Shown in pieces: positions 41,228 through 49,527 of a stretch of DNA of 64,000 nt; positions within the stretch are counted from its first letter, which is position 1, and the number at the start of each line of letters is the position of its first letter. The stretch is from Geosiphon pyriformis uo1. Taxonomy: Eukaryota; Fungi; Glomeromycota. The notes beneath the pieces were generated by a model. It saw only the letters and a program-made list of their open reading frames with translations. It had not been told where the DNA came from and did not search any database. The DNA is taken from the NCBI GenBank assembly GCA_016748015.1, contig JAAOMT010000752.1:256976-320975 (forward strand), in the 5' to 3' direction. A program made the translations under genes and the position numbers.

Positions 41228-42645
41228 ATGCTGAATAATTTGGATTTCGATAAGAAATCGCCACCAAAAATGTCAATGTATTTTTTATTTATAATTTTCA
41301 TTGGATTACTCCTTTACCTGATTCAATCTTCTACTACAAGAAATTGGCTACCAGAATCAAATTGGAAATCAACTGAGAATACAAAATTAAATGGAAAAAT
41401 TAACTTAGACTCAACAAAGGGAACAATAAATAGCCCAGTTCAAGTAAGTGACATGTTTTGGTCCAATATTTTTGAAGAGACCAATCACAGCAAAACAGAA
41501 ATAAGAGGGGAGGTTACGTTCTTCAAAAATTACAAATAAAAAAATTTCTTTCACTCAGCATTTATCGGAAAGGAATCGTTATTCATTTATCAGGTCTAAC
41601 CACCTCCCTGGTAAATACCTTTTAGAAAATGCAACTACATATCAATTTCTGGCCAGGATGGCGAAATACGCGAAGCAAAGTTTCAATCTAGTAGAAAGAA
41701 AGCATAGACTAGGAGACAGTGAGATTTTTAGTATGAAATTGAAAATTTTGTTTCAAGTTATCCAATTCAATTTCAATGTTTTTTAACTTGAAATTTGACC
41801 TTTAAGTGGGTGTTGAAACCAGAGAAGAGGAAGGGAAACAAATTATCACTGTATTCTTTAAAGCACCTAGTTTTTCCTATGAATGGTTAATGGGGCTTGA
41901 TAAAGAGACTCCCACACAAATATATGGGAAGATTCAATCGCGTAGGGTTAGTAGTATGCTTCTTGCAGTATTTAACAGGCACAAGTTGGCAATAATAAAA
42001 AAAATAGCGACACCAATGATAGTAAGGAAATTTGATTACGAATTTATTGGTCATGGTACAGCTGGAGGTATTTATTTTTTGTTGTTTTGTCTTACTTTAG
42101 TGTTGGCAAAGTACCAAAGTACAATTTATAAATTTTATACAATTATTTAAAGCTATTGCCACGTTCGCAGCAGTACAGTTTAGAGCGAAGTATGGAAAAT
42201 TAAAAGTTTCCCTCACAACTTTTGGCTCTCCACGAATAGGTAATGGATACTTTGCAGATTCTGTTGAAAGAGGAATTATTGTCTATCGTGTTACCCATTC
42301 AAACGATTGGTATCCACAATTCTTCGCAAATATGAGTCATATTCAACCAGAATATTGGATTCCAGGGGACGATGATTGTGATTGTCACAACACTGATAAT
42401 GTGAAAGTGTATGAGTGTTGGTCTGAAATCAGCGAAATTCGTGATAGAGTTGGTCATCCGGTTTGTAACTTTAATCAATAAATTAAAGTTTTTTTTTTTT
42501 TTTCAGCCAAAAAATGTAATACATGTATATTCCTTGAACCTTTTTTTAGGAATGTAATGCACAATTTTGGTTGGGGGATGCAAATTTAAATAAAAATGTG
42601 GTATATAATCGGGGTCCATACTTTGGTTATATAATGGAAAAGTGA
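41228..42645 (+). CDS. Secreted lipase class 3-fold protein, predicted inactive (elbow GHGTAG)
   Basis: Exons 41228-41442, 41559-41718, 41807-42067, 42153-42460 and 42550-42645. Signal-like MYFLFIIFIGLLLYLIQS; MAKYAKQS, FIGHGTAGAIATFAA, TTFGSPRIGN, YRVTHSNDWYPQF, HIQPEYWI, CDC, VYEC, ECN...NRGPYFGYIM. Confidence 0.8.
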
Positions 42646-42761
42646 AACCTTCTTTTGTTGCAGAGAAAATTTATTTCAATTTTTATTATTGAGTCAAATT
42701 TTAATTAAGAATTAGCCTGATTGATTATGAACCTAAAAATCTCCACATTTGATTTTATTTC

Positions 42762-42798
<37 letters not shown>

Positions 42799-43149
42799 CT
42801 AATAAATTAAACTAGCAAAATTCGAAAATTTTTAAAAAACAATAATTTTAAAAATTATTTCACTAAACGAAAATAATTAAGTTACGAAATTAGCAAATGG
42901 TTTCTGAACCCTAATTTTTTTTTCTAAAATGCAACATTATACATATATTTATGAAATATTACGTTCTCTTCTCCCAATATGATACACAAATAAAAATATT
43001 ATTCAACAAAAAAAACTTGATTAAAATGTTTAAGTTTTTGATTGGGTTTAAAGAAATTTCTATTTATTTTTCGATTAAGCTGTTTACAGTCTTATTCTCA
43101 CAAATACACAATACATCAAAAATAATTGATGCAACACATTGTATTGTAC

Positions 43150-43187
43150 AATTCAATTCAATTCAATTCAATTCAATTCAATTCAAT
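43150..43187. repeat. (AATTC)n pentanucleotide repeat
   Basis: Directly visible; explains the IQFNS repeat in ORF 42951. Confidence 0.9.
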
Positions 43188-44471
43188 TAAATTCGATTTT
43201 TATGAGGTATTTAATATTTCTCTCATGAATACAAATCAAGTGATTAATATATGGATTCATTTTTAATTTAAAATTATCTCTTGAATCAAATATATTCATT
43301 ATTTGTTAAAGATTAAAAAAATATTATATGCAAATATTCATATTAAACATATTTTATTTAAAATTAGAATACATTAAAAACTTGGTAATTATATCAAAAT
43401 ATTTTTGTGATTACTTGAAAATTAGCTATTTTTTTCAAAATATAAAAATTGTTAGTGTTGAAATAATTTTAAAGTTTTATCAAGCTTTTTAATTTTTTTT
43501 GAAATCTTTTAAAAGTGAATAAATAATTGATATTTAATTTTCCTTTGCATATGTGTCTTGTGAAAGTTTAATGAAACTTTAAATTCTTGATTTGATTGTC
43601 AAATGATGTATAATGTATTTTTTTAAAACTCTATTTTTTATGTCATTGTTAACATGGTTTTTTATTAAATTTATCAAAAAATTAGAAAGATTAAAATTCC
43701 AAGAATCAAGAAAATTAAGTTAATTTGGGAACTTAATTATTAAACTTTAAATTAATCAAATATTTTACAATTGGTGTTTGTTTGCATACGAATTTGCTTT
43801 CTGTTCCACAAGCATCATACGCCAAGGGACTTTTTTAATGAAAAATGGCAAATTAGTATCTTTGATCACGAAAAATACTTGCATTGTACTTCCAATTCTT
43901 TTATAAACCTCTATTTTGGATTTTTAATTCGATTAATCGCTCGTAAGTTTATATGAAATTAGATTCAGAATCTCTTGTTTCTTTCCAATATTCCCTGCAT
44001 TTTTTTCATATATATTTTCGTAACCTGTATACCTCAATCGGCTAAATTTAAGGGTTGTATTTCTAAAACTGTAATTCATTTCTTTTAGATTAAGAGTTTC
44101 TCCTTTTGGATAACATTTTTTTTTTGGTAAGGATTAATGTTTAGCAATTTGCGTGACTTACCAATTGCATTAACAGTAACATTCCTTTGATTAAAAGGTG
44201 AACCTCTCTATCAAGTATATTACCAAGAAAAAAGCATGATTCATCTTGGGTTACCTTTCGTTGATGCCTTCTGCGTAGAAACCTCTTTAGGGAAAACAAT
44301 TTAAGCGGGATAAATTTGTCATTCAGAGCACAAAATTCCTCCAAAAAACAACCTCGTGTAAAACTATAAAATCTCAATGCAGTGCTAAAGAGTTTTTCAA
44401 TTATTCCAAATTTTTAGCAATAATCAAGAAAAATTGGGTCTCATACCATCTAAAGCAACTCAATTCTAAAA

Positions 44472-46109
44472 ATGCGTTTTGATGAAATTTTTCGAAGCTA
44501 TCGTTCGAGTGAACCAACACAACTGGTCGTTTTTCGTGCATTTATAATGGTACTCTTTTTAGGCTTGATGCTGGGTTACCTTTCCATTTTGTTGATTGAT
44601 ATTAGCGGAGATAACCCAGTTCTGAAACAATCAACGCGGCTGGTTGATTCCTTGCCGATTCCAGGTAATTTTTACATTAGAATTTGGAGTTTATATTATT
44701 AAAAAGTCGCTAATGAAAAAGCATAATTTGGCAGATATGAACTTTCTATTAGATTACCCCTTCATACTTACTTGTGAATTTGTAATTTTAGGTAAGCAGC
44801 ACCATACTCTTCACTTTTTATTATTTGAATGTTTAACGAGTTTCAAATATTAATTTTCCTTTTTATTGAAAAAGATGGCAGTTCTGGAAATTCTTGTCAA
44901 GATTACATTAGTTACGATAATTCAAACGGTTATAGCGGAATGTTTGTTAATCCCGCAGGAAGTTTAAAAGCATACCCACCAACTCGAAAAGACCAAATTT
45001 ATGGCATCAGATTTGGGGTGACTGTTAATTCTCCTAAATTTGACCCAAATAGACCTGGAGTTTTGGTGTTTCAAGCATATGATGGAGGTATGTTCTTTGA
45101 CTGTCAAAGACTTCCCAGATTGTTATCTCGAATTCGAATCTAATTTTGATTTCTGTAAAAATAATTTGAAGAATTGAAAAATTCGATATCTTCATATAAA
45201 GACGATTCAGTTTATTTGTTATCTCTTATTGGGATGAATACATTTCCATTAGCTGTAGGTATTTTTGACTTTAACTCATTTTGATGTGGGGGGTTTTTTT
45301 TTGAATATACGCAGTAAATGTATTAATCAACTTTAATGGTGATAACAATTTTTTTAGTATCGTTTAGTAAGTATTAAAAATCAAAAGCTCGGATTTATAT
45401 GCATATATGCGTAAAAAAAAATCTTAATCGACTTTTGCGTTACTTCGTTGCCATATTAAGAATACAGCGGTTGAATTCACAAGGTCATTAAAAGAAATTA
45501 TCCAACCTAGTGCTCTAAATTCTTTGGGTATTCCGCCAAAACGCAAAACCGAGCCTTGGGTTAACACTGTACTTAGTAAGTTTTAAAGAATTCATGATTT
45601 CAACTAATGTGAATTGATCGGCATTATTAATGACTCACGATCAATGAATTAGTCACCTCGCCCTTATCAATAAATGATACATCGGCCTATGGAACGGTAA
45701 CTCTTCTTCCGCAGAGCTTTTTAGTCAAAGTTGAAACAGAGCAGAGGTAAGCTATCAAGCAAGCAAGCATATTTTCAGAAATTTGGGTAACTTTAAAGAT
45801 ATTTTGAATGGTTCTAATCCTGTTTTACGTGAAAACTTTGTTTTAATTTAATTGGACAGATCAAAAACTGTGAGCATTCTTTTTTAATTTCTTTCTGTAA
45901 TTGGTTAAATTTCTAGTCAATGAAATATTAGCTCACCAGGGATCATTTTGTAAAAATGGTTTTTTTTTCCTCTAAAAATCTAGGCTCTGAGTTCTTTTGC
46001 TTTGTTTGGTGGAGCATGGGGCATAGCAGCTGCAGTTTACACAGCGATCTTCGGTAGGTCATTTACAAATATTTACCAAATCAAAAAAAGTTTTTTTTTC
46101 TCGACTAAC

Positions 46110-46163
<54 letters not shown>

Positions 46164-46620
46164 GCACTTTAATTATACACAAATCAAAGGTACTGACTCC
46201 TTGCGTCCTTTTGGATGTGCACAAATATTTTGCTGCGTATTCGCTCGAAAATCATCGGCCCATCTTCGGAAAACATTTCCTATAATTCCACTCGTGAGTC
46301 AAACAAATTTTCCCTCCTCTCAAAATACTCCACAATCACAAGATCCAGCGTTTAGACATCTAGAAGCTAGATTTAATGCTTTGGAAATGTTTCTAAGCGA
46401 ATACATTGTCGATGATTCTCATTTAAAAAAATTACGAAAACTTGCCGCTAATGAAGAGAAATCAAATACAGACCAAGTACCAAATATTGTGGAACTCCCA
46501 TACCCTAATTCAGATTATTCAACGTCACCTTACTTGCCACCCCCGATGGAAACAAGTGAAAGTCCCCCACAACATATTTACCCTGTCAAACAAAATTATA
46601 ATATTTATCCCCCACAATGA
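44472..46620 (+). CDS. Two-transmembrane protein with large extracellular loop (424 aa, 10 exons); PAC/TMEM206- or DEG/ENaC-like architecture
   Basis: Exons 44472-44664, 44735-44791, 44875-45087, 45172-45254, 45358-45366, 45461-45575, 45653-45746, 45860-45869, 45984-46053 and 46190-46620 splice with GT-AG into one 1275-nt stop-free frame. TM1 VVFRAFIMVLFLGLMLGYLSILLI; TM2 ALSSFALFGGAWGIAAAVYTAIFG; C-terminal coiled coil (FRHLEARFNALEMFLSEY) and P/Y-rich tail. The gene model is well supported; the channel call is inference. Confidence 0.7.
46109..46162. repeat. (TAT)n microsatellite in the last intron of the two-TM gene
   Basis: Directly visible. Confidence 0.9.
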
Positions 46621-48053: not shown

Positions 48054-49527
48054 ATGAAAATTTTTTGGATTAATATTATAAATAATAACTTTAAAGAAAA
48101 GGAATCATTCGAATTTTGTGCAAAATTTTTAATTAAAAAACTTGAAAATTTCCAATACCAATTCTCAAGATTTTTTTTAGTCCTTTTATTTTTTTATTTT
48201 TTAAAGTGCTTGACATTTCAATCCTTGAATATATCGTTTTCCCAAAAAAGATTTAAAGAACACGAATTTCCTGAAAACTTTAATACCTCTAATTCAACTA
48301 AATTTATCAATAGCCAAAAACATGATTCAATTTTAATGCAATCAAAATTTTTAAATTCAAATAAATCAACCAAAAGAACTACTCAAACCAAAATCCTAAT
48401 TCCTGAGGCCCACCCCATTTTACAGAAATTAGAGGATGCCGCTTATTATTCTTACATAGCCTATTGTTCCCGTAATGAAAAAAAGATGGATATAGAGAAC
48501 ATAACGTATGGTAAAAATTTAAAAAAAAATTTATTTCCAAAAAAATTTTTTAACTTTCATCTTTAATAATAAAACTTGCATTCATATTTGATATATATAT
48601 TAAGGGATATATTTATAAATAACAACGAAATTATTATAACCTTTCACACACCCTTTGATTTCCTCGAGGAAAATAAGGAAAGAAGATTAGTTCCTTTTCC
48701 TGATGGCGGACCGGATACCAAAGTTGATTTTTCGTTTTTCGAAACTTTCAAAAAAATTGAGACGAGCTTGTTTATCAGCATTTCAGAAGACTTGGATATC
48801 AATGTGAACATACAAAAAATTTTATTCACGGGACATGAAATTGGGGGTGGTAAGTAATATCCTAAAGAATTTATTTTATAAATTTTTAATATAAAAAATT
48901 GTTTTATCAGATTAATAATTTAATATCATATCATAATCGTAAAAATATATAAAATTTTGATTTTAGTTCTAGCAGTATTTTCAGCACTTGGATTTAAAAA
49001 ATTTCAATCCGGCTCAAATCCTATCAAATATCGACCGCAAATCAAAGTAGAAGTTGTTACATTTGGACAATTGCGTATAGGAAATTTTTATTTTGCGAAA
49101 TATGTTGAAAAAACTTTAACTCTTTTAGAAAAAAATTCTGAAAACGAATATTTGGTTTCAATACCGGCTTTATATCGGGTAACATATTCAAGTAATCTTA
49201 TCTCCCAATTCCCAATACAAAATGGAAAACTTGGCTATTTCCATCACTCAATTGAATATTGGATTGAAGGTGAAACAAATGATTGTAATTGTTTGTTTTA
49301 TCCTAGAGTTTATGAGTGCCATGGAGTTATGAAGCCGGCTGGATACTTGGATGAGCCTGAGGTATGCTATTTTCCCTAAAATTTTGATGAGCATTCATTT
49401 CATTCATAAAAATTAATATTTTTTTTCGCATTTATAGGATTGTAATAAGCATGCAATGTTAACCCAATACAAGCGTAAGAAGGAAAATGGTCCATATTTT
49501 GAATATATTATGGGTGAATGTATTTGA
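48054..49527 (+). CDS. Lipase class 3-fold protein, predicted inactive (elbow GHEIGG)
   Basis: Exons 48054-48505, 48605-48849, 48967-49361 and 49438-49527. Hydrophobic FFLVLLFFYFL; AAYYSYIAYC, ILFTGHEIGGVLAVFSAL, VTFGQLRIGN, YRVTYSSNLISQFP, YFHHSIEYWI, CNC, VYEC, DCN...ENGPYFEYIMGEC. Start codon uncertain. Confidence 0.8.

What the first reader, a model, noticed from the sequence alone, without database searches (positions are those of the whole stretch)
44472..46620. Candidate fungal member of the PAC/TMEM206-ASIC/ENaC two-TM trimeric ion channel superfamily
Seen: ten exons splice to a 424-aa protein with a short cytosolic N-terminus, TM1, a ~230-aa beta-rich loop containing two Cys, TM2 and a cytosolic tail. 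After TM1 it reads DNPVLKQSTRLVDSLPIPDMNF...ILTC; before and in TM2 it reads GTVTLLPQSFLVKVETEQRSKTALSSFALFGGAWGIAA. Established: PAC/TMEM206 and DEG/ENaC channels have this topology, with a P-V-x-x-S...P-x-hydrophobic motif after TM1 and a beta-strand/acidic linker leading into a GG- or CG-containing TM2. From memory (needs checking), human PAC has HPVMSVSYKEVDRYDAPGIAL...LLSC and FEWKDPFIQKVQDIVTANPWNTIALLCGAF, which line up with both segments. Inference: a proton- or ligand-gated channel type usually considered absent from fungi, fragmented in the ORF track because of its short exons.
Basis: partly seen in the sequence, partly recalled or inferred. Interest (0 to 1): 0.8.

Follow-up and report, generated by a model that had tools for sequence, protein, structure and literature searches.

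The report
Fungal PAC/ASIC-fold two-TM channel candidate
This expressed ten-exon gene of the fungus Geosiphon pyriformis encodes a two-pass membrane protein whose predicted shape matches the animal trimeric ion channels PAC/TMEM206 and ASIC/ENaC, a channel type reported to be absent from fungi; channel activity is untested.

Summary
Window 44472-46620 (+) is a ten-exon, 424-aa gene. Spliced cDNA contigs confirm eight of its nine introns and both micro-exons (9 and 10 nt). The protein has a short N-terminus, TM1, a ~215-aa beta-rich loop with two Cys, TM2 and a ~140-aa tail.

It belongs to an unannotated multigene family with no Pfam match. There are at least 12 loci in this genome, and every named member is from Glomeromycotina.

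AlphaFold models of two referenced paralogues (35% and 82% identical) hit only PAC/TMEM206 first (Foldseek E 6.5e-13; VIA Z 13.8, 233 of 270 residues), then ASIC/ENaC. A family profile weakly hits PAC sequences at TM1 and the first strand (E 0.038). A three-copy prediction passed its controls (0.50 against 0.00). TM2 is the most conserved segment.

The fold-level reading is therefore supported. Missing are a Pfam TMEM206 or ASC match, PAC's TM2 lysine, its histidine pH sensors and ASIC's GxS/HG motifs. The gating stimulus and ion selectivity are unknown, and channel activity is inferred.

The scan has already flagged paralogues of this family elsewhere in the same genome. The joined protein had no reference, so it was searched exon by exon and through paralogues.

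The parts
44399..44471 (+). 5' UTR; the transcript contig starts at 44399
   Evidence: cDNA contig 1 begins at 44399 and carries a 9-nt non-genomic end, CGGCCGGGG. From my own knowledge this resembles the tail of a cap-switch cDNA oligo. It argues for a start site separate from the upstream lipase gene.
44472..44664 (+). Exon 1 (aa 1-65): N-terminal R..EP motif, TM1 (aa 17-43, nt 44520-44600) and the post-TM1 strand DNPVLKQSTRLVDSLPIP
   Evidence: The donor is confirmed. The motif aligns to PAC residues 91-114.
44735..44791 (+). Exon 2 (aa 65-84), with the conserved Cys78
   Evidence: One search confirms both flanking joints. The exon is conserved in the family. The GenBank model P0065 skips it.
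44875..45087 (+). Exon 3 (aa 84-155): ectodomain beta strands, with the invariant Cys91
   Evidence: The acceptor is confirmed. The donor at 45087 is not covered by a contig.
45172..45254 (+). Exon 4 (aa 155-182)
   Evidence: The donor at 45254 is confirmed. The acceptor is inferred from frame and homology. P0065 skips this exon.
45358..45366 (+). 9-nt micro-exon TATCGTTTA (aa 183-185)
   Evidence: table 5c, shows these letters between 45254 and 45461. It restores the family's 11-residue spacing. It is conserved in the C615 paralogue.
45461..45575 (+). Exon 6 (aa 186-224), with the FTRSLKE..P..LGIPP motif
45653..45746 (+). Exon 7 (aa 224-255): the last ectodomain strands, leading into FLVKVETEQR
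45860..45869 (+). 10-nt micro-exon ATCAAAAACT (aa 255-258), which completes the invariant E.R..T linker before TM2
   Evidence: table 5c. The family has ETE.R..T here. GenBank models P0065 and P0001 miss it.
45984..46053 (+). Exon 9 (aa 259-282): TM2, ALSSFALFGGAWGIAAAVYTAIFG. It is the most conserved segment and the putative pore helix.
   Evidence: One search gives 63% mean pairwise identity here against 26% in the ectodomain.
46190..46620 (+). Exon 10 (aa 282-424 plus stop): the cytosolic tail. It holds the juxtamembrane LRPFG..Q..CC motif (nt 46192-46236), P.IPL, a conserved amphipathic helix (aa 334-365, nt 46345-46440) and a low-complexity end.

Best explanation
What it is: the gene encodes one subunit of a fungal, Glomeromycotina-wide multigene family. 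The family is a remote, fold-level relative of the animal PAC/TMEM206 and DEG/ENaC trimeric two-TM channels, and is closest in size and shape to PAC.

Shown here:
- the protein has the two-TM topology;
- referenced paralogues are confidently predicted to adopt the PAC ectodomain-plus-TM fold.

Inferred:
- Three subunits, identical or paralogous, assemble around a threefold axis.
- The highly conserved, uncharged, Gly/Ala-rich TM2 (..GGAWG.A...Y...FG) lines a pore, together with the invariant E.R ring just above it.
- The fast-evolving ectodomain senses an extracellular or luminal stimulus and opens the pore.
- The conserved cytosolic tail is a family-specific addition that PAC lacks. It consists of the RPWG..YCC motif, a possible acylation site, and an amphipathic helix.

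The stimulus and ion selectivity are unknown. PAC's histidine pH sensors and TM2 lysine are absent, so a PAC-type proton-activated chloride conductance is not predicted in detail.
For: - Gene model.
- Family: 61 representatives at E<=1e-3 with the last exon alone. Named members are all Glomeromycotina, from four orders. There are at least 12 loci in this genome.
- Models: AlphaFold2 model of P0048 has pLDDT 78 overall and about 90 in the ectodomain. The model of P0001 has pLDDT 73.
- Foldseek on the P0048 model: ranks 1-18 are all PAC/ASOR/TMEM206 (7sqg_A E 6.5e-13, TM by target 0.61). ASIC follows from 2.5e-10.
- Foldseek on the P0001 model: ranks 1-20 are PAC (1.7e-10 to 2.2e-8). ASIC follows from 1.5e-7.
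- VIA-align: 7sqg_A Z 13.8, rmsd 3.9, 233 of 270 residues, model 17-290 on PAC 65-329. ASIC 6ave_A gives Z 13.3. Of 999 chains, 93 reach Z>=8 and only 96 reach Z>=5.
- Sequence: the family profile hits six PAC sequences among seven PDB hits. The best is E 0.038, aligning TM1, P99, D109, P114 and C128.
- ESM Atlas: TMEM206 and ASC clusters are among the nearest, by shape and by language-model features (score 0.85, a lead only).
- Trimer: ipSAE 0.50 against a best control of 0.00. The mark was reached by 21 of 30 proteins solved as pairs of one chain and by 0 of 23 solved as single chains. The runs agree in at least 82% of contacts and partner pLDDT is at least 71. Symmetric self-contacts lie in the pre-TM2 linker or upper TM2.
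- Conservation: TM2 63%, ectodomain 26%.
Against: - No Pfam match to TMEM206 or ASC for any exon, for 21 family members, or in the six-frame genome.
- The sequence signal to PAC is marginal (E 0.038) and confined to the N-terminal third. A profile of the C-terminal half finds no PAC.
- The models are of paralogues, not of the window's own joined protein.
- The trimer pass may come from the predictor's memory of solved PAC/ASIC trimers, and the calibration used two copies.
- TM2 has no charged residue, and the ectodomain of this copy has no histidine.
- Against its recent duplicate on C615, exons (92.8%) are no more conserved than introns (94.3%), and all codon positions differ about equally. 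Purifying selection on this particular copy since duplication is therefore not shown.
- No current has been measured for any family member.
Confidence: 0.62

Rival explanations
1. It has the PAC/ASIC fold but is not a channel. On this view the family uses the trimeric two-TM scaffold as a receptor, sensor or membrane-organising protein. It would signal through the conserved cytosolic tail (RPWG..YCC and the amphipathic helix) rather than conduct ions.
For: A shared fold shows no function (note). The conserved tail modules are absent from PAC. The known pore determinants K319, GxS and HG are missing (PMC9351481). Atlas shows the same module fused to Kelch propellers in a 1002-aa Mucoromycota cluster, which suggests signalling architectures.
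Against: TM2 is the most conserved part of the protein (63% against 26% for the ectodomain), which is the pattern expected of a pore helix. Every characterised protein with this fold is an ion channel.
Confidence: 0.2
2. It is a true functional equivalent of PAC: a proton-activated, anion-selective channel of acidic compartments or of the acidic symbiotic interface.
For: PAC is the best structural and the only sequence match. D59 aligns with D109 of PAC's acidic pocket and D43 with D91. Family consensus has E at the position of E107.
Against: The position of the sensor H98 is N48. The ectodomain of this copy has no His at all, so there is no H130/H131 equivalent. L57 stands at E107. TM2 has no Lys, so there is no K319 equivalent (PMC9351481). 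Pfam PF15122 does not match.
Confidence: 0.1
3. The resemblance is an artefact or convergence. On this view a beta-rich loop between two TM helices is drawn by the predictors towards the known ASIC fold, and the family is unrelated.
For: Sequence identity to PAC is only 8-15%. There is no Pfam hit. ASIC structures were in AlphaFold2's training set (my own knowledge).
Against: The ectodomain is modelled at pLDDT around 90 from a real 21-24 sequence alignment, for two different targets. The best matches are PAC, which was solved after AlphaFold2's training cut-off (my own knowledge), not ASIC. Nearly the whole PAC chain aligns. Independent HMM evidence points to PAC at the equivalent position. 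There is a sharp Z gap to everything else.
Confidence: 0.05

Closest known systems
PAC / TMEM206 / ASOR (PACC1), the proton-activated chloride channel; Pfam PF15122; e.g. PDB 7sqg, 7jna, 9hqn
   Same: - Two-TM topology with both termini cytosolic.
- An ectodomain of about 215 aa, which aligns almost completely (233 of 270 residues, Z 13.8).
- A predicted trimer.
- A shared post-TM1 motif (D..P......D....P.............C) at equivalent positions.

   Different: - No PF15122 match; 8-15% identity.
- No TM2 lysine (K319), no H98/H130/H131 sensors, and no His in this copy's ectodomain.
- A long conserved cytosolic tail (RPWG..YCC plus a helix) that PAC lacks.
- A multigene family (at least 12 loci in this genome), whereas TMEM206 is a single gene without paralogues (PMC6663466).
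- Fungal rather than deuterostome.
DEG/ENaC superfamily (ASIC1, ENaC, FaNaC, PDPNaC1/BRTNaC1); Pfam PF00858
   Same: A core palm/beta-ball plus two-TM fold (ASIC1 6ave_A Z 13.3; ENaC and FaNaC Z 11.5-12.6). Like invertebrate DEG/ENaCs, it is an expanded, fast-evolving paralogue family with a conserved TM2.
   Different: - The ectodomain is about half the size, without the Cys-rich thumb and finger (two Cys only).
- No PF00858 match.
- No pre-TM1 HG motif and no TM2 G-x-S motif in this protein.
- Foldseek ranks it behind PAC by 2-3 orders of magnitude.
Other Glomeromycotina paralogues, annotated only as hypothetical proteins: G9A89_001023 (P0048), G9A89_008550 (P0001), G9A89_016831 (P0041), Rhizophagus OCT59_001273 (P0067)
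   Same: They are true family members, alignable end to end at 25-82% identity with all motifs shared.
   Different: None is characterised. The GenBank model of this very gene (G9A89_004416, P0065) is a chimera with the upstream lipase_3 gene. It also lacks exons 2 and 4 and both micro-exons.

Membership tests
PAC/TMEM206 (PF15122) | Sequence match to the Pfam TMEM206 model above its gathering score | tested here: not met
   There was no hit for the exon peptides, for 10 plus 21 family members, or in the six-frame genome at our loci. The only signal is a family profile against PAC chain sequences at E 0.038-1.1.
PAC/TMEM206 (PF15122) | Two TM helices flanking a beta-rich ectodomain of about 215-230 aa, with both termini cytosolic | tested here: met
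   Hydropathy and model: TM1 is aa 17-43, the loop about 215 aa, and TM2 aa 259-282. The sidedness is inferred by analogy.
PAC/TMEM206 (PF15122) | Ectodomain plus TM fold superposable on solved PAC | tested here: met
   Foldseek E 6.5e-13 and 1.7e-10, with PAC first for two models. VIA Z 13.8, rmsd 3.9, 233 of 270 residues. The models are of paralogues P0048 and P0001, not of the joined window protein.
PAC/TMEM206 (PF15122) | Homotrimer with TM2 on the threefold axis | tested here: met
   This is a prediction only. Three copies gave ipSAE 0.50 against a best control of 0.00, at least 82% contact agreement and pLDDT of at least 71. The pass may reflect memory of solved trimers, and the calibration used two copies.
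PAC/TMEM206 (PF15122) | Lysine in TM2 (human K319) that sets anion selectivity | tested here: not met
   TM2 of this protein and of 19 relatives has no charged residue. The role of K319 is taken from PMC9351481.
PAC/TMEM206 (PF15122) | Histidine pH sensors (H98, H130, H131) and the acidic pocket (E107, D109, E250) | tested here: not met
   N48 aligns with H98, L57 with E107 and D59 with D109. The ectodomain has zero His. The residue roles are from PMC9351481.
PAC/TMEM206 (PF15122) | Acid-activated, outwardly rectifying chloride current | not testable with these tools
   This needs electrophysiology.
DEG/ENaC (PF00858) | Sequence match to the Pfam ASC model | tested here: not met
DEG/ENaC (PF00858) | Large Cys-rich ectodomain with thumb, finger and knuckle | tested here: not met
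   The ectodomain is about 215 aa with two Cys. ASIC chains of 400-450 residues align over only about 230 residues.
DEG/ENaC (PF00858) | Pre-TM1 HG motif and TM2 G-x-S selectivity motif | tested here: not met
   There is no HG in aa 1-16. TM2 reads GGAWG. One relative, P0014, reads GGASS. The motifs themselves are from my own knowledge and from PMC6663466 (GxS).
PAC-DEG/ENaC trimeric two-TM fold (superfamily level) | Shared palm/beta-ball core joined to two TM helices, with only superfamily members among the strong structural matches | tested here: met
   All 50 listed entries are PAC, ASIC, ENaC, FaNaC or related NaC channels. Of 999 chains, 93 reach Z>=8 and only 96 reach Z>=5.

The most novel reading that the evidence does not exclude
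Arbuscular-mycorrhizal fungi and Geosiphon carry a diversified family of functional trimeric channels. It would be a third, fungal branch of the PAC-DEG/ENaC superfamily, with fast-evolving sensor ectodomains and its own cytosolic tail. That would place the origin of this channel architecture before the fungus-animal split, or else reveal an ancient transfer. It would also give these obligate symbionts a set of extracellular or luminal stimulus-gated conductances, possibly working at the acidic symbiotic interface or in acidic organelles.
Probability: 0.5. Interest if true: 0.8.

Novelty: new variant of a known kind. Interest (0 to 1): 0.72.

Why it matters
[quoted passage not shown] BLAST with Deg/ENaC queries found candidates in holozoans, one alveolate and one stramenopile, but none in Fungi (PMC10507113).

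A pan-Glomeromycotina multigene family with the PAC fold changes the known distribution of this channel architecture. It offers small, minimal-ectodomain members for structure-function work on gating and selectivity, because they lack the known PAC and ASIC determinants. It also gives candidate ion channels in fungi whose symbiotic membranes are poorly characterised electrically.

On the practical side, the GenBank model of this gene is a chimera that misses four exons. Micro-exon-rich genes of this family are systematically mis-annotated.

Tried and rejected
- Pfam scans of each exon peptide, of 10 full-length relatives and of all 21 alignment members gave no TMEM206 or ASC hit, only scattered chance hits.
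- Pfam TMEM206 and ASC models against the whole genome in six frames found nothing at any family locus. One unrelated 15-bit hit lay on C627.
- A profile of the C-terminal half (last strands plus TM2) against PDB sequences gave only chance kinesin hits.
- My first nine-exon model (420 aa) used the acceptor at 45468. Transcript contigs and family spacing showed the 9-nt micro-exon instead, so I rejected it.
- The recent paralogue on C615 could not be used to delimit exons, because its introns are as conserved as its exons.
- Word-based protein searches reached only Glomeromycotina.
- Literature searches found no paper linking TMEM206/PAC or ASIC to Rhizophagus or Glomeromycota.
- The joined 424-aa protein has no reference, so it was not sent to any search, fold or complex tool. 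It was joined only inside local scripts, for translation, hydropathy, and BLAST and MAFFT against proteins already fetched.
Full report
**Organism and locus.** The window is G000:C537:256976-320975 of a 128-Mb, 792-contig, very AT-rich genome. The best protein matches are annotated Geosiphon pyriformis. GenBank protein G9A89_004416 (P0065) maps onto the window at 41228-46617.

**Gene model.**
- Reading the three frames and placing GT..AG introns gave a nine-exon, 420-aa model.
- Family alignment showed that relatives have 11 residues between GMN.F and FTRS, where my model had 7.
- Spliced contigs of the one public run that holds the locus (X1) then settled it. They skip 44665-44734, 44792-44874, 45576-45652 and 46054-46189.
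- They join 45254 to 45461 with TATCGTTTA in between, and 45746 to 45984 with ATCAAAAACT in between.
- These two inserts are genomic micro-exons at 45358-45366 and 45860-45869, each with AG/GT flanks.
- Only intron 45088-45171 lacks transcript cover. The joined protein aligns end to end with full-length paralogues across it (P0048, E 1.6e-61, residues 1-359).
- The contigs are spliced, so the run holds cDNA, although it is recorded only as 'RNA?'.
- Contig 1 starts at 44399 with a non-genomic CGGCCGGGG end. From my own knowledge this resembles a cap-switch oligo, and it suggests a start site 73 nt before the ATG.
- GenBank's P0065 fuses this gene to the lipase_3 gene at 41228-42690. It also omits exons 2 and 4 and both micro-exons. 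It is a mis-annotation.

**Handling of the spliced protein.** The joined protein has no reference, so I did not send it to any search, fold or complex tool.
- Searches were done exon by exon by reference and through referenced relatives.
- The join was made only in local scripts, for translation, hydropathy, BLAST and MAFFT against proteins already fetched.

**Anatomy.**

| Residues | Feature |
|---|---|
| 1-16 | Family R..EP motif |
| 17-43 | TM1 |
| 44-258 | Ectodomain, 215 aa; two Cys (C78, C91), no His, 20 acidic and 19 basic residues |
| 245-258 | Strand and linker, FLVKVETEQRSKT |
| 259-282 | TM2, uncharged and rich in Gly/Ala |
| from 283 | Tail |
| 283-300 | LRPFG.AQ..CC motif |
| ~311-316 | P.IPL motif |
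| 334-365 | Conserved amphipathic helix, followed by a low-complexity end |

**Family.**
- The last exon alone found 61 cluster representatives at E<=1e-3 among 1.84 billion proteins.
- Every member that carries a name is from Glomeromycotina: Geosiphon, Ambispora, Paraglomus, Rhizophagus, Funneliformis, Entrophospora, Diversispora, Gigaspora and Acaulospora.
- The family profile hits at least 12 separate loci in this genome, some in local clusters.
- The nearest copy, on C615 (P0001, G9A89_008550), is a recent segmental duplicate. Exons are 92.8% identical and introns 94.3%. All three codon positions differ about equally, and all splice sites and both micro-exons are kept.
- Purifying selection since that duplication is therefore not visible.
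- Across the family, TM2 is the best conserved region (63% mean pairwise identity). Then come the N-terminal motif (50%), the tail helix (49%), the juxtamembrane motif (48%) and the pre-TM2 linker (44%).
- The ectodomain shows only 26%.
- No Pfam family matches any exon or any of 21 members.

**Relation to known folds.**
- *Sequence.* A profile of the 21-member alignment against all PDB chain sequences returned seven hits at E<=10, six of them PAC. The best is 7ji3_A at E 0.038; human and bovine PAC score 0.15-1.1.
  - The hits align TM1 and the following strand.
  - Family D43, P49, D59, P64 and C78 (window numbering) fall on PAC D91, P99, D109, P114 and C128.
- *P0048 model.* The AlphaFold2 model of P0048:1-385 with that alignment has pLDDT 78 and about 90 across the ectodomain and TMs.
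  - Foldseek against the PDB puts PAC/ASOR/TMEM206 chains at ranks 1-18 (E 6.5e-13 to 2.1e-10, TM by target up to 0.63). ASIC1 follows from 2.5e-10.
  - VIA-align gives PAC 7sqg_A Z 13.8 (rmsd 3.9, 233 of 270 residues, model 17-290 on PAC 65-329).
  - It gives ASIC1 6ave_A Z 13.3, and ENaC, FaNaC and related channels Z 11.3-13.1.
  - Of 999 chains, 93 reach Z>=8 and only 96 reach Z>=5, so there is a sharp gap.
- *P0001 model.* The model of P0001:1-300, 82% identical to the window protein, has pLDDT 73. It again puts 20 PAC chains first (1.7e-10 to 2.2e-8) and ASIC from 1.5e-7.
- *ESM Atlas.* By shape, the nearest clusters are Mucoromycota hypothetical proteins. A Chordata TMEM206 cluster (TM 0.47/0.44) and an ASC cluster (0.55/0.56) are also listed. 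By language-model features, a TMEM206 cluster scores 0.85, which is a lead only.
- *Training-set point.* From my own knowledge, PAC structures were released after AlphaFold2's training cut-off. The PAC-first ranking is therefore not memory of PAC. ASIC structures were in the training set.

**Trimer.** Three copies of P0048:12-298 scored ipSAE 0.50 (runs 0.48, 0.52, 0.50) against a best control of 0.00.
- The mark was reached by 21 of 30 proteins solved as pairs of one chain and by 0 of 23 solved as single chains.
- The runs agree in at least 82% of contacts, and partner pLDDT is at least 71.
- The calibration used two copies, and a pass for a family with solved complexes may come from memory.
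- The lowest-error contacts are symmetric self-contacts at 258-266. Whichever numbering the tool used, these lie in the ETE.R linker or the upper half of TM2.

**What it does not share.**
- PAC's selectivity lysine in TM2 has no counterpart, because TM2 is uncharged throughout the family (role from PMC9351481).
- H98 aligns with N48 and E107 with L57. This copy's ectodomain has no histidine, so H130 and H131 have no counterpart.
- The pre-TM2/TM2 half gives no sequence signal to PAC.
- ASIC's HG and G-x-S motifs and the Cys-rich thumb and finger are absent.
- The conserved cytosolic tail has no equivalent in PAC.

**Interpretation.** The protein is best filed at superfamily level, as a fungal branch of the PAC-DEG/ENaC trimeric two-TM fold, nearest to PAC. 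It is not a member of Pfam TMEM206 or ASC.
- The most likely mechanism is a trimeric channel with a TM2-lined pore, gated through the variable ectodomain. I put this at about 0.6.
- The conservation pattern supports a functional TM2. The stimulus and selectivity cannot be read from the sequence.
- A non-conducting receptor or scaffold role is the main rival.

[quoted passage not shown] Elkhatib et al. searched Fungi with Deg/ENaC queries and found candidates only in holozoans, one alveolate and one stramenopile (PMC10507113). My literature searches found no report of such a family in Glomeromycota.

**Earlier notes of this scan.** The scan itself has already flagged paralogues of this family on other pieces of the same genome, and follow-ups reached the same reading (s1-515913, s1-526111, s1-513396). 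I saw these only after reaching my own conclusion.

Noticed in passing
window 41228-42690 and 44478-46617 (GenBank G9A89_004416 = P0065): The deposited gene model is a chimera. It joins a lipase_3 (PF01764) gene across about 1.8 kb to this gene, and it omits exons 2 and 4 and both micro-exons. A transcript contig starting at 44399 argues for two separate genes.
   Followed up: yes
window 46116-46170: A long (ATT)n microsatellite sits inside the last intron. The reads tool skipped 46102-46170 as a repeat.
   Followed up: no
G000:C615:344557-346682 (L002/L004; P0001 = G9A89_008550): This is a recent segmental duplicate of the whole gene. Its introns (94.3% identical) are at least as conserved as its exons (92.8%), and all codon positions differ about equally. 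The constraint is relaxed or diversifying. The GenBank model of this copy also misses the 10-nt micro-exon and the first 32 codons.
   Followed up: partly
ESM Atlas cluster, row 2 (no locus): A Mucoromycota cluster of 1002-aa proteins (193 members), auto-named 'galactose oxidase' and carrying Kelch propeller domains, matches the model over residues 1-364 (TM 0.62). This suggests that the two-TM PAC-like module also occurs fused to a Kelch domain.
   Followed up: no
ESM Atlas clusters, row 6 and rank 3: Ciliate-dominated clusters carrying Pfam PF27811 (Y80K_N) are among the nearest by shape (TM 0.52) and by features (0.86). They may be a further protist family with this fold.
   Followed up: no
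P0039 (Funneliformis geosporum, 727 aa): This protein aligns twice to the window protein (residues 1-369 and 374-727). It is either a tandem pair of family genes merged into one model or a true two-module protein.
   Followed up: no
G000:C348:170290-172239 and 185263-186989; C657:860480 and 876474-878333; C718:1422886-1424802: Family members lie in local clusters 15-17 kb apart on several contigs, so the family has expanded in tandem.
   Followed up: no
window 48966-49319: There is a second lipase_3-like segment downstream, 33% identical to the upstream lipase gene.
   Followed up: no
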